This document shows, one piece after another, positions 13,846 to 35,083 of a stretch of DNA of 64,000 bases. A model generated the notes under the pieces. The model saw only the letters and a list, made by a program, of their open reading frames with translations, was not told the DNA's origin and did no database searches. Origin of the DNA: Chrysemys picta bellii (lineage: Eukaryota); the NCBI RefSeq assembly GCF_011386835.1, contig NC_088803.1:19158001-19222000 (forward strand), given 5' to 3'. A program made the position numbers and the translations under genes. Position 1 is the stretch's first letter. Every line of letters starts with the position of its first letter.

Positions 13846-14064
13846 CAGGGCTGGCTCCAGGGTTTTTGCCGCCCCAAGCAGCCAAAGAAACAAAAAAAGC
13901 CGCAATCGCAATCTGCGGCGGCAATTCGGCGGGAGAATCTTCGCTCCGAGCCGGAGGGAGGGACCGTCCGCCAAATTGCCGCCGAATAGCTGGACTTGCT
14001 GCCCCTCTCCGGAGTGGCCGCCCCAAGCACCTGCTTGCCAAGCTGGTGCCTGGAGCCAGCCCTG
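13846..14064. mobile_element. hAT (Tip100/MER45-like termini) MITE, copy 1
   Basis: Perfect 14-bp TIR CAGGGCTGGCTCCA / TGGAGCCAGCCCTG; its own flanks (ATCGGACA vs GCAGTGAC) do not match. Confidence 0.85.
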
Positions 14065-15587
14065 GCAGTGACTCAGAAAAACACTTGGGATCACAGTGGA
14101 GAGTCAGCTGACCCTGAGCTCCCAGTGCGGTGCTGCGGCCAAAATAGCTAACATGATCCTGGGGTGCAGAAACAGGAATCTCCAATAGGAGTCGAGGGGT
14201 TATTTTCACTTGGAAGTTGGTATTGGTGCAACTGCTGCTGGAATCCTGTGCCCAGTTCTGGTGCCCACAATTCAAGAAGGATGTTGGTAAATTGGAGAGG
14301 GGTCAGAGAAAAGCCACAAGAATGATTAGATGATTAGAAAACCTGCCTTGTCATGCTAGTCTCAAGGAGCTCGATCTATTTAGCTTAACACAGTCTCTAA
14401 GTACCTACCTGGGGAACAAATGGTTAATAATGGGTAGAGAATCCAGCCGAGGAACCGTCTAGCCCGACCCAATGGCTGGAAGTTGAAGTTAAACAAATTC
14501 AGACTGGGAATAAGCTGCAAATTTTTAACCATTAGAGTAATTAACCGTTGGAACAAATTACCAAGGATCATGGTGGATTTTCCATTGCTGGCGATTTGTA
14601 AATCAAGCAGGTCTGTTTTTCTAACAGAGCTGCGCTAGCTCAGCCAGGAATTTACGAGAGCTGGTCTCTGGCCTGGTTCCTACCGGAGGCCAGACAAAAT
14701 GATCACATGGACCTTCTGGCCAGACAAGCAATGACTCTACAAATCATATCCCTCACACAATGGCGGTGGCATTTGCCTGTGTCATCTCTTTCCAGAGATA
14801 ACTTTCCAAGCCACTCCTGCTGCCCGTAACAGTGACACTGTTACCAACCCAGTGCCAGAGCCCTCTGCTCTCATTGATCAAGGTCTGGGAAATCATCTCA
14901 AAGGGTGACTCCTTATGGGCAGGGCTGGGGAAGAGCAGACCCCAAATTCACATCTTTCTGCCAGCTGTTTTCAGTCCCATGCACCCCCTCCCCATTTTAT
15001 AGCTAAGTCAGCAGAGAGGGTCTCCGAGGGCCAGAACGGAGGCAGGTCTGTGATGTGGCAACCCACCTCCATCTCTCCATCGCCGGGCAGCTGCTTTCAT
15101 CTGCTGGGGGTTGACCTGGGGACCTCCCCAGCTAAACCATCAGCTACTACAGCTTGAGCAAAAGATCTCGTGTCCCTGTGGACTGGCATAGAGGGGTACC
15201 CGTCACATACACCCAGCCGATGGTTGTGAAGACATAAGCCACCCCGTCTCCCAGAGCCCAGCCTTCTTGGCCACTCCATTGCTGCGCCGGACTAGCAAAG
15301 CACCCCGTGACCCGCTGGGACTTCACCAGCTGGTCCACCACAGGGCCAGCAGTTACTCCTCGGTCAAGCAGCAGGGGTAAAGGATGGGACTTGGCCATGC
15401 TGCATCTGGGGCCAGCGCAGGAGGAGACGACCCTGGCTGTGGCCATGGGGCTGGAGGACAGAAGCACCCCACCCAGGTCTCCTCCAGCTCCCATGCCACT
15501 CCGCTGAGGCTGGGCCAGTGCCTGAACACTCTGTTCCCTACGAGGCTGATCTGCTCCACCCCTCAACCCCGATCCCCCGGGACTCAC

Positions 15588-15651
15588 CAGCCTGAGCCCC
15601 GGGGGGCAGGTCTTGCAGGAGAAAGGCCACAGGGAGCAGGAACAGTAGCAT
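15588..15651 (-). pseudogene. Protease copy D: orphan exon 1 (signal peptide MLLFLLPVAFLLQDLPPGAQA)
   Basis: 64-bp ATG-to-GTGAGT exon paralogous to 37482-37545; its intron 1 is cut at the MITE end (14065) and no exon 2 follows. Confidence 0.8.
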
Positions 15652-16229
15652 CCTCAGTTCAAGCTCAGGGATGGTGCATCTCCCTCAGCCCTGAAAGGTT
15701 GTACAGACCTGCCGGGGGCAGAGGGGTGGGGGGAAGGAAACCTCAGGGTGTGGTTTGCACCGGCCTGGCGGGAGCTCAGCTGTCTCAGTTCCTTGGTCCT
15801 TCTCAGCTATCCCCTGCCCTGTGGGGTGAGTGTGAGCTGGGGGAGCAATGTGGGTCAGAGAGACCGGATCCCCCCATCTGTGACAGCCCCACTGCCCACA
15901 GACACACCCCCCCCATGGGGGGAAAGAGTGTCTCTAATTATCAGCTCTGCCAAGCCAGCCAGTCCCTGCCCTGTGGGCAGAATGGGGCTGGTGCCCCTAT
16001 AGGGAAAAAGCCCCGTGTTCCATTCCCCGCTCCCTTGAGCCAGCCAGCCCCCCTACCCCCCAACCCCACTGGGGCCAGATGGGAGCTGGCACCCCCTAGA
16101 GATAACATAACACAGGGAGAGGGGAACAACAGAGATATCATTGGATAGAGGTGTGTATGGGGCTAGAGAGAGAGCTAGATAGATGGGGATGAGGATGGAT
16201 AGACAGATGTGGATGGGGATAGATGGATG

Positions 16230-34200: not shown

Positions 34201-34618
34201 TCAGCCCCTCACTCACACATGCCCCTAGTTAATCTCACTCTGTTCCGCTGCACTAAGTCAACTCCTTCCTGACCCCTGCAGGCTGTGCCCTGGAGCATGA
34301 GGGTGGATGGCTCTGATGTCACCTGGCACAACAGGAGGGATGGCTGGAGTGATGCCACTAGGACCAGCCTGGAGTCTTAGGGCTGAGCGCTAATTCCCAG
34401 GACAGGGAGCGAACCTCCCCATGGGCCAGTGGGCTCCTAACCCCCTGCACCTCTGTGGCTGCCCCATGAGCCCAATATTATTGGAGTCACTCCCCTTCCG
34501 CAATCACCTACCCAGTTGATCCGATCAGGCCCTGGATGGCGAGAGACATGGGTCACCTAGTGCCCTCGACTCCTCAACAGCTGGGTCAAGGCTCCGCCCA
34601 CAAAGCCGGTCCCACCTC
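31252..34618 (-). pseudogene. SDR39U1: SDR39U1 (epimerase family) copy: exons 34512-34618, 34025-34107, 33126-33247, 32095-32238, 31252-31667; in-frame TAG in the first visible exon; exon 1 not found
   Basis: Spliced translation GGTGFVGGALTQLLRSRGH*VTHVSR...DDLSRSGLPPCDAAVNLAGENVLNPLRRWDDAF...VTGVGYYRPS...[35 protein letters not shown]...LLEGQRVAPKRTLESGY aligns by eye to human SDR39U1; all introns GT-AG; stop at 34557-34559 where Glu is expected. Confidence 0.88.
32450..33070. repeat. Degenerate ~70-bp tandem repeat in an SDR39U1 intron
   Basis: Recurring GGGGACTATTTT...GGCGGAAG...GTGCTG units. Confidence 0.65.
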
Positions 34619-34859
34619 CTGATTTAAATAGATACTTTCAAGCATTGGTGCCCGTCACTCCCGACCCACTGCCAGCCCAGCCCTGGGCTCTCCCTTGCTC
34701 TTCTGGTGCCCCATACTCCTGACCCGCAGCCTCCTACTAGCTCAGCCCTGGGCTCCCCCCGTTCTGCCGGTGCCCCTCACTCCCAACCCACAACCCCTGC
34801 TAGCCCAGCCGTACCAGTGCCCCTCACTCCTGACCCACAGCGCCTTGCTCCCCCCGAGC

Positions 34860-35083
34860 CAGGGCCAGCTCCAGGGTTTTGGCCGCCAAAGGATCCAAAA
34901 AAAAGAAAAAAAAGAAAAGCCGTGATCAAGATCTGCGGCGGCAATTCGGCGGGAGGCCCTTCACTCCGAGCGGGAGTGAGGGACCATCCGCTGAATTGCT
35001 GCCGAATAGCTGGACATGCCGCCCCCTCCGGAGTGGCCACCCCAAGGACCTGCTTGCCAAGCTGGTGCCTGGAGCCGGCCCTG
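34860..35083. mobile_element. hAT (Tip100/MER45-like termini) MITE, copy 2, same orientation as copy 1
   Basis: Termini CAGGGCCAGCTCCA / TGGAGCCGGCCCTG; interior colinear with 13846-14064; its own flanks (CCCCGAGC vs ATGGGACG) do not match. Confidence 0.85.

What the first reader, a model, noticed from the sequence alone, without database searches (positions are those of the whole stretch)
13846..35083. A 20.8-kb rearranged block sits exactly between two copies of one hAT MITE whose outer flanks form a single target site
The paralogous empty site (reverse complement near 18310-18330) reads GGGAGATCATCA-ATGGGACG-GGAACTCAGCGC. Copy 1 is preceded by GGGAGATCGTTG-ATCGGACA, and copy 2 is followed by ATGGGACG-GGAACTCAGCGC. 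The left junction of copy 1 and the right junction of copy 2 therefore belong to one original insertion, 21 kb apart. The inner ends cut copy-D intron 1 at 14065 and the SDR39U1 upstream region at 34859. Deleting the block would restore a tandem A-C arrangement and reconnect copy A to a conserved AATAAA (35187-35192; paralogue 18212-18217). Breakpoints at transposon termini are the signature of hAT alternative transposition, known for maize Ac/Ds. A vertebrate immune-gene inverted duplication made this way would be notable; the mechanism is inferred.
Basis: partly seen in the sequence, partly recalled or inferred. Interest (0 to 1): 0.72.

Follow-up and report, generated by a model that had tools for sequence, protein, structure and literature searches.

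The report
MITE-bounded 21-kb composite insertion, turtle
In the painted turtle's granzyme/chymase gene cluster, 21 kb of DNA (a dead SDR39U1 copy plus parts of two protease genes) lies between two small hAT-type transposon relics and inside one split 8-bp target site, the mark a transposase leaves when it moves two neighbouring elements and everything between them as one unit, which has been shown in maize but, as far as I could find, not in a vertebrate.

Summary
Two same-orientation MITE copies (13846-14064 and 34860-35083; 84% identical; 16-bp TIR CAGGGCTGGCTCCAGG) bound a 20.8-kb block. Their outer flanks are contiguous in an inverted paralogue, which carries the 8-mer ATGGGACG once.

New facts:
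- The paralogous 5.4-kb unit inside the block ends at MITE termini on both sides: the 3' end of copy 1, and a third hAT-like MITE (19380-19555) with a perfect 8-bp TSD.
- The SDR39U1 in the block is a pseudogene; the working copy lies elsewhere on the same chromosome.
- A Malaclemys gene model shows the same SDR39U1-copy/flank adjacency, so this is not an assembly error.
- The A/B paralogy predates crown Emydidae, while the SDR39U1 duplication is younger. More than one event is therefore recorded here.

Best reading (about 0.5): a transposase integrated a composite bounded by two MITEs (a macrotransposon or composite insertion) into the 3'UTR of a protease gene fragment. This is alternative transposition in the broad sense. 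Recombination between three MITE copies gives the same end structure and is not excluded. No reads or orthologous DNA could be fetched.

The parts
12284..13845 (+). a1: protease fragment A. It contains the start of intron 3 with 51-bp repeats, exon 4 (12579-12851), exon 5 (13198-13347) and the proximal 3'UTR. Exons 1-3 are absent.
   Evidence: tblastn and Pfam Trypsin hits. Homology to B starts at AATACCAG (12284-12291), which corresponds to B's GGTACCAG, the TSD copy next to M3. There is no similarity further left.
13838..13845 (+). Left copy of the 8-bp target-site duplication (ATCGGACA).
   Evidence: It matches the right copy and the empty site at 6/8 positions.
13846..14064 (+). M1, a hAT-like MITE of 219 bp with a perfect 16-bp TIR.
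14065..18312 (-). b2: the distal 3'UTR and poly(A) signal of B (18212-18217), the intergenic DNA, and the promoter, exon 1 (about 15651-15588) and first 1.5 kb of intron 1 of truncated protease D. It ends exactly at the M1 3' terminus.
   Evidence: Non-CpG K2P distance to b1 is 0.13-0.19.
18313..18320 (-). Empty target site in the paralogue (ATGGGACG, present once, no footprint).
18321..19379 (-). a2: B exon 4 (about 19054-18782), the 51-bp repeats and the proximal 3'UTR. Exon 5 is missing; the A segment 12856-13394 has no counterpart in B.
   Evidence: The sequence is identical to the annotated 175-aa cathepsin G-like protein P0121.
19380..19555 (-). M3, a second hAT-like MITE of 176 bp, sitting 7 nt into B intron 3. 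It has a perfect 8-bp TSD, GGTACCAG, at 19372-19379 and 19556-19563.
19564..21256 (-). B exons 3, 2 and 1 (signal-peptide exon at 21256).
24395..28296 (+). Full-length CR1 LINE with intact ORF1 and ORF2. It probably inserted later into the block, which would have been about 4 kb shorter before.
31255..34622 (-). SDR39U1 pseudogene, five exons. It has an in-frame stop at 34559-34557 and its start codon region is replaced and out of frame.
34646..34854 (-). 64-bp tandem repeats between SDR39U1 exon 1 and M2, ending 5 bp from M2.
34860..35083 (+). M2, a hAT-like MITE of 224 bp.
35084..35091 (+). Right copy of the target-site duplication (ATGGGACG).
35084..38938 (+). b1: the distal 3'UTR of A with AATAAA at 35187-35192, the intergenic DNA, and the promoter, exon 1 (37482) and first part of intron 1 of the intact protease E.
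   Evidence: The first exon of the Malaclemys SDR39U1-like model maps antisense to 35117-35152.
38939..41282 (+). c: the rest of E intron 1, in which the CR1-like repeat continues across 38938, and E exons 2-5. This has no counterpart in the block.

Best explanation
The stretch 13846-35083 was integrated as one unit by a hAT-type transposase. The reaction used the 5' terminus of one MITE (M1) and the 3' terminus of another copy of the same family (M2) lying in direct orientation about 17-21 kb away. Everything between them travelled along: the 5' end of protease D, protease B, and SDR39U1. This makes it a macrotransposon or, if it was copied during replication, a composite insertion. The unit landed in the 3'UTR of the paralogous protease fragment A, between A and protease E, and duplicated the 8-bp target ATGGGACG.

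Shown: the element structure, the exact junctions, the split target duplication, the empty paralogous site, and the gene content.

Inferred: that a transposase rather than recombination made the joints; that M1 and M2 were separate insertions, M1 in intron 1 of D and M2 upstream of SDR39U1; and the time of the event.

A second break at a MITE terminus removed exons 1-3 of A at the position of M3. This suggests that transposase-induced breaks shaped the locus more than once.
For: 1. Two full-length copies in direct orientation have intact TIRs, and the outer termini abut a duplicated 8-mer (6/8). The same 8-mer is single in the paralogue.
2. Flank homology runs to the last base on both outer sides, and on the inner side of M1.
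3. The inner flanks are unrelated to each other (2/8 and 3/8). That is expected if each element keeps one flank of its own old insertion site.
4. A second hAT-like MITE in the block has a perfect 8-bp TSD, so 8-bp duplication is the rule for these elements here.
5. A's homology to B begins within 2 bp of the M3 terminus, yet no MITE sits at that junction. Recombination between repeats would leave one; a cut at a transposon end would not.
6. The same adjacency of the SDR39U1 copy and the antisense A 3'UTR is implied by a Malaclemys terrapin gene model, so the structure is real and at least as old as the Chrysemys-Malaclemys ancestor.
7. Maize Ac/Ds macrotransposons and composite insertions of 10-28 kb with 8-bp TSDs are documented, including retention of the donor copy (PMC9910405, PMC4270019).
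Against: - No orthologous empty site, donor site or footprint could be examined.
- The hAT assignment rests only on the TIR (CAGGG...) and the 8-bp TSD. No family consensus or transposase is in hand.
- M1 and M2 differ by 16%, so it cannot be shown that both were mobilisable at the same moment.
- Ectopic recombination between three MITE copies yields an identical end structure.
- The ages do not fit one event. A/B paralogy is older than crown Emydidae. The SDR39U1 pseudogene shares two derived residues with deirochelyine functional copies, and about 14 of its 15 differences from the functional C. picta protein are its own. Yet only one B-type protease is annotated in C. picta. Either the block is old and SDR39U1 was duplicated away later, or the block is a young copy whose donor B gene is gone.
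- The TSD is only 6/8.
Confidence: 0.5

Rival explanations
1. Homologous recombination between MITE copies, with no transposase acting on the block. One MITE inserted normally in the A 3'UTR and made the TSD. Later the DNA between two other copies, one in D intron 1 and one upstream of SDR39U1, was placed into it. This could have happened by two unequal crossovers (a duplication followed by a deletion) or by break repair copying from that template. M1 and M2 would then be chimeric elements.
For: - It gives exactly the same junctions and mismatched inner flanks.
- It is duplicative, which fits the SDR39U1 in the block being a pseudogene whose functional copy lies on the same 55.6-Mb chromosome.
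- The chymase locus is known to evolve by unequal crossing-over, and turtles have about 20 genes in it (PMC8537139).
- An old single insertion fits the imperfect TSD.
Against: - It needs three independent same-orientation insertions plus two exchanges, or a 20-kb repair tract, between 220-bp repeats.
- It predicts a second B-type protease at the donor. Only one is annotated in C. picta.
- It cannot explain the A left boundary at the M3 terminus, where no MITE was left behind.
Confidence: 0.22
2. A single-copy ancestor (SDR39U1, then one complete protease, then E) carried one MITE upstream of SDR39U1 and M3 in intron 3. Two coupled alternative-transposition reactions between sister chromatids or homologues followed. 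One used the two ends of the MITE and targeted the a|b site. The other paired a MITE end with the M3 end and targeted intron 1 of E. Together they produced both MITE copies, the inverted 5.4-kb duplication and the block at once.
For: - The duplicated unit is exactly the DNA between the M3 and M1 termini.
- The window holds only one copy of exons 1-3, of SDR39U1 and of the body of E.
- M1/M2 divergence (non-CpG K2P 0.16) equals that of the b pair (0.13-0.19).
- On paper this set of cuts and joins reproduces every junction with only two MITE insertions.
Against: - The flank-joining step predicts that the DNA left of A ends in the old TSD of the MITE (GCTCGGGG). The observed sequence is TACTGTTA (1/8), and there is no similarity to the SDR39U1 upstream repeats.
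- The model needs ends of two different MITE families to pair (similarity is weak).
- The a pair is significantly less diverged (0.09-0.10) than the b pair.
- Two rare reactions must coincide.
Confidence: 0.15
3. Assembly artefact, or a chance coincidence of two unrelated MITE insertions.
For: No reads could be laid on the junctions.
Against: - The copies and the paralogous arms differ by 10-19%, so an assembler would not confuse them.
- The junctions are exact at four termini with a shared 8-mer.
- An independent assembly of another species (Malaclemys) supports the right-hand adjacency.
- NCBI annotates B exactly as it is found here.
Confidence: 0.03

Closest known systems
Ac/Ds macrotransposons of maize (Huang and Dooner 2008, PMC2553603; Wang et al. 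2022, PMC9339288; Sharma et al. 2022, PMC9910405)
   Same: Two hAT elements in direct orientation. The outer 5' and 3' termini are used together. The intervening host DNA (10-28 kb) moves as one unit. An 8-bp TSD surrounds the whole, and the donor copy can be retained.
   Different: Here the ends are 220-bp non-autonomous MITEs in a vertebrate. The event is ancient and is inferred from one locus. No excision footprint or donor has been seen, and the cargo landed inside a paralogue of part of itself.
Composite insertions from reversed-ends transposition with re-replication (Zhang et al. 2014, eLife, PMC4270019)
   Same: An insertion bordered by transposon termini with an 8-bp TSD. The interior is made of copied donor flanks, 19-23 kb in size, and the product is duplicative.
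   Different: The internal fusion junction and the linked tandem duplication that define those alleles were not identified here. Only SDR39U1, not protease B, has a known second copy.
P-element hybrid element insertion and hobo- or Ac-induced rearrangements, which use transposon ends from different copies or chromatids
   Same: Breakpoints fall exactly at transposon termini, and the new joints carry target duplications.
   Different: Those are laboratory events that give deletions, inversions and duplications next to one element. Here a bounded block was inserted.
Repeat-mediated non-allelic homologous recombination (for example Alu-Alu)
   Same: Full-length repeats sit at the breakpoints with mismatched flanking duplications.
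   Different: It makes no new TSD, and it would leave a repeat copy at every recombinant joint. The A left boundary has none.

Membership tests
hAT-superfamily non-autonomous element (MITE) | 8-bp target-site duplication | tested here: met
   The outer flanks of M1/M2 match 6/8 and the site is single in the paralogue. M3 has an 8/8 TSD, GGTACCAG.
hAT-superfamily non-autonomous element (MITE) | Short terminal inverted repeats starting CAG/TAG (YARNG-type) | tested here: met
   CAGGGCTGGCTCCAGG is 16/16 in M1 and 15/16 in M2. M3's termini are CAGGAGC.../CAGGGCC....
hAT-superfamily non-autonomous element (MITE) | Dispersed multi-copy family sharing termini with an autonomous element that encodes a hAT transposase | not testable with these tools
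   The window holds only two copies, and no vertebrate genome collection is available.
Macrotransposon | Two elements of one family in direct orientation bounding host DNA, with intact outer termini | tested here: met
Macrotransposon | One TSD flanks the whole unit, and the target is contiguous when unoccupied | tested here: met
   Shown with the inverted paralogue at 18313-18320. The orthologous empty site was not available.
Macrotransposon | Inner flanks are the separate old insertion sites of the two elements | tested here: inconclusive
The inner flanks are unrelated (2/8). The other halves of those sites lie outside the window.
Macrotransposon | Donor site with an excision footprint or a retained copy | not testable with these tools
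   A functional SDR39U1 lies on the same chromosome, but its DNA could not be fetched.
Composite insertion (reversed-ends transposition plus re-replication) | Interior made of the two donor flanks in switched order, fused at a novel junction; the cargo duplicates retained donor DNA | tested here: inconclusive
   The SDR39U1 in the block is a duplicate pseudogene. Only one B-type protease is annotated, and no fusion junction was identified.
Repeat-mediated NAHR product | A repeat copy at every recombinant joint, chimeric repeats, and a duplicated or deleted reciprocal product | tested here: inconclusive
   This holds for the M1 and M2 joints but not for the A left boundary. Chimerism cannot be tested without a family consensus.

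The most novel reading that the evidence does not exclude
One burst of hAT alternative transposition, with two coupled reactions using the ends of one MITE and of a neighbouring MITE of another family, turned a simple SDR39U1-protease-protease array into the present nested structure. In doing so it created the second MITE copy, the inverted 5.4-kb duplication and two complementary half-genes at once. That would make it a vertebrate counterpart of the progressive Ac-induced rearrangements seen at the maize p1 locus.
Probability: 0.15. Interest if true: 0.8.

Novelty: new member of a known kind. Interest (0 to 1): 0.58.

Why it matters
DNA transposons are usually credited in vertebrates with small insertions and with seeding recombination. 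Movement of tens of kilobases of host DNA by paired hAT ends is experimentally established only in plants; related events are known from flies. In the paper library I searched, every paper using the term macrotransposon concerns maize or rice, apart from one review of a fish piggyBac-like element.

This locus could be a natural vertebrate case. Here such an event would have moved or copied a housekeeping gene and protease gene parts within the fast-evolving chymase/granzyme cluster. If so, transposase-driven restructuring would join unequal crossing-over as a cause of immune-gene cluster turnover in reptiles.

The case is cheap to test, because chromosome-level assemblies of at least ten turtle species carry the orthologous region.

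Tried and rejected
- Single-target models (sister-chromatid or reversed-ends transposition of one element): rejected, because the 8 bp right of M1 and left of M2 do not match in either orientation (2/8, 3/8).
- Inversion by recombination between inverted MITEs: rejected, because the copies are in direct orientation.
- Simple unequal crossover between two MITEs: rejected, because it would leave the a-flank to the left of M2.
- Prediction that the DNA left of A carries the old TSD of the SDR39U1-upstream MITE or more 64-bp repeats: not met.
- Flanks of the related 64-bp arrays at 48.2 and 56.5 kb: no homology to any junction.
- Further MITE copies in the window: none.
- Rfam: nothing.
- Earlier scan notes by sequence and by words: nothing on this MITE family.
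- My first impression that A and B share derived residues against Mauremys and Gopherus was wrong. With more taxa those states are ancestral.
Exons were compared one by one by reference or in scripts.
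Full report
**What is there**

The window comes from the painted turtle, Chrysemys picta bellii. Exons 2-4 of protease B translate to a protein identical to the annotated 175-aa cathepsin G-like protein XP_008174053.4. The region is part of the expanded reptile chymase/granzyme locus (PMC8537139).

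Two copies of a 220-bp element lie at 13846-14064 (M1) and 34860-35083 (M2). They have the same orientation and are 84% identical. Their terminal 16 bp form inverted repeats, CAGGGCTGGCTCCAGG. The four termini are the only matches in 64 kb, against 0.23 expected by chance.

**The split target site**

Self-comparison of the window shows two things:
- 12301-13845, left of M1, is homologous to the reverse complement of 19317-18313.
- 35084-38938, right of M2, is homologous to the reverse complement of 18320-14065.

In that inverted paralogue the two parts are contiguous and overlap by the 8-mer ATGGGACG (18313-18320). ATCGGACA stands before M1 and ATGGGACG after M2.

**Gene content**

All protease pieces below hit Pfam Trypsin or align to protease exons.
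- A (plus strand) consists only of exons 4-5.
- B (minus strand) has exons 1-4. It lacks exon 5 through a 539-bp deletion relative to A.
Its signal-peptide exon is at 37482 and exons 2-5 are at 39584-41282.
- D (minus strand) is a promoter, exon 1 (15651) and 1.5 kb of intron 1, and it stops at M1.

A CR1-like repeat in that intron runs on across position 38938 in E, as a third copy at 8955-9389 shows, but ends at the M1 terminus in D. D is thus the broken copy.

The block also holds a full-length CR1 with intact ORFs (24395-28296) and SDR39U1 on the minus strand (34622-31255; DUF1731 hit). M2 sits about 210 bp upstream of SDR39U1 exon 1.

**New point 1: a third MITE marks the other end of the paralogous unit**

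B intron 3 carries a 176-bp element (19380-19555), 7 nt after the exon 3 donor site. It has CAGG-type termini and a perfect 8-bp duplication, GGTACCAG.

A's homology to B begins at AATACCAG (12284-12291), which corresponds to the duplication copy next to that element. Nothing to the left of it resembles exon 3, the MITE, or any other junction.

So the 5.4-kb unit shared by the two arms is exactly the DNA between the M3 and M1 termini. The A-side break lies at a MITE end, yet no MITE was left there. A cut by a transposase explains that; recombination between repeats does not.

**New point 2: the SDR39U1 in the block is a pseudogene**

Against the functional C. picta protein the copy shows:
- an in-frame stop at codon 26 (34559-34557);
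- a replaced, out-of-frame start region;
- 15 differences in 251 aligned residues, nearly all at positions invariant in turtles and alligator.

The functional gene lies on the same 55.6-Mb chromosome.

The pseudogene shares two derived residues (L99, S102) with the functional copies of Chrysemys, Malaclemys and Trachemys, but not with Emys. It shares six further derived residues with the annotated "SDR39U1-like" gene of Malaclemys. The SDR39U1 duplication therefore dates to the deirochelyine stem.

The first exon of the Malaclemys model (MGCAAGWSCWKE) maps antisense to 35117-35152. That is 33 bp beyond M2, inside the A 3'UTR remainder, and it is followed by a GT donor. The adjacency of the SDR39U1 copy and the right-hand flank therefore exists in a second species and a second assembly. 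This argues against an artefact.

**New point 3: the ages differ**

Non-CpG K2P distances:
- the a pair: 0.09-0.10;
- the b pair: 0.13-0.19;
- M1 versus M2: 0.16.

In an exon 4 tree, B groups with the full-length Terrapene orthologue (support 89/93) and A falls outside that pair. Macrochelys and Natator also have full-length orthologues, and C. picta has only the truncated B. The A/B paralogy thus predates crown Emydidae, whereas the SDR39U1 duplication is younger. At least one further event is needed:
- either the block is old and SDR39U1 was later copied elsewhere, with the original decaying here;
- or the block is a young duplicative copy whose donor B gene has since been lost.

**Mechanism**

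Any reaction that uses the two ends of one element on one target predicts matching 8-mers on the inner flanks. They do not match (GCAGTGAC versus CCCCGAGC).

The structure equals that of maize macrotransposons and composite insertions: two direct-orientation elements, outer termini, one 8-bp duplication, 10-28 kb of cargo, and sometimes retention of the donor copy. I take this as the best explanation, with confidence of about 0.5.

Recombination among three MITE copies, by two crossovers or by break repair, gives the same picture and fits the duplicated SDR39U1. It needs more events and does not explain the A boundary (0.22).

A fully coupled model, in which one MITE and M3 generate everything from a single-copy array, reproduces all the joints on paper. 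Its prediction for the DNA left of A fails (0.15).

**Limits**

No reads and no orthologous or donor DNA could be examined. The hAT assignment rests on the termini and the duplication length alone. The statement that mammals have proteases upstream of SDR39U1 on the same strand comes from my memory, and I use it only as background.

Noticed in passing
window 31255-34622 (minus strand): The SDR39U1 here is a pseudogene. It has a stop at codon 26 (34559-34557), a disrupted start region, and mostly CpG-type replacements at invariant residues. The functional copy lies elsewhere on the same chromosome. Malaclemys has an orthologous 'SDR39U1-like' gene, so the duplication is specific to deirochelyine turtles.
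   Followed up: yes
window 19372-19563: A 176-bp hAT-like MITE with a perfect GGTACCAG duplication sits 7 nt into intron 3 of protease B, directly after the exon 3 donor site. It is absent from E and from A.
   Followed up: yes
window 18776-18778 versus 12856-13394: B lacks exon 5, which carries the catalytic serine, through a 539-bp deletion relative to A. NCBI annotates B as a 175-aa protein that reads through into the intron (...SSFKVMP). A and B are complementary half-genes on opposite strands, and recombination between the inverted arms could in principle bring exon 5 back in line.
   Followed up: partly
window 12301-12481, 19145-19367, 40374-40558: A 51-bp tandem repeat at the start of intron 3 is shared by A, B and E. 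Its unit contains a copy of the end of exon 3 and the donor site (CTGCTGCAGGTACC).
   Followed up: no
window 34646-34854, 48257-48826, 56535-56942: One family of 64-bp tandem repeats lies upstream of the SDR39U1 pseudogene and, inverted, at two sites further right. The alternative first exon of the functional C. picta SDR39U1 isoform X3 (P0126) translates to a similar repeat-derived peptide, so the array predates the SDR39U1 duplication.
   Followed up: partly
window 38939-38955: In E, the 14 bp just past the position where D was broken (CCAGGATTGGGTCC) resemble the MITE terminus (CCAGGGCTGGCTCC) at 11 of 14 positions. This may be chance, or it may have favoured that target.
   Followed up: no
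window 12482-13845 versus 35084-38938: The a arms (0.09-0.10) are significantly less diverged than the b arms (0.13-0.19). Possible causes are past coding constraint or gene conversion between the inverted arms, which lie 4.5 kb apart.
   Followed up: no
window 24395-28296: A full-length CR1 with intact ORF1 (GDSL-like esterase domain) and ORF2 (endonuclease plus reverse transcriptase). It looks young and potentially active.
   Followed up: partly
window 2215-3320 and 6214-7365: About 1.1 kb of GC-rich sequence is repeated in both direct and inverted arrangement (83-89% identity) to the left of the locus. It was not characterised.
   Followed up: no
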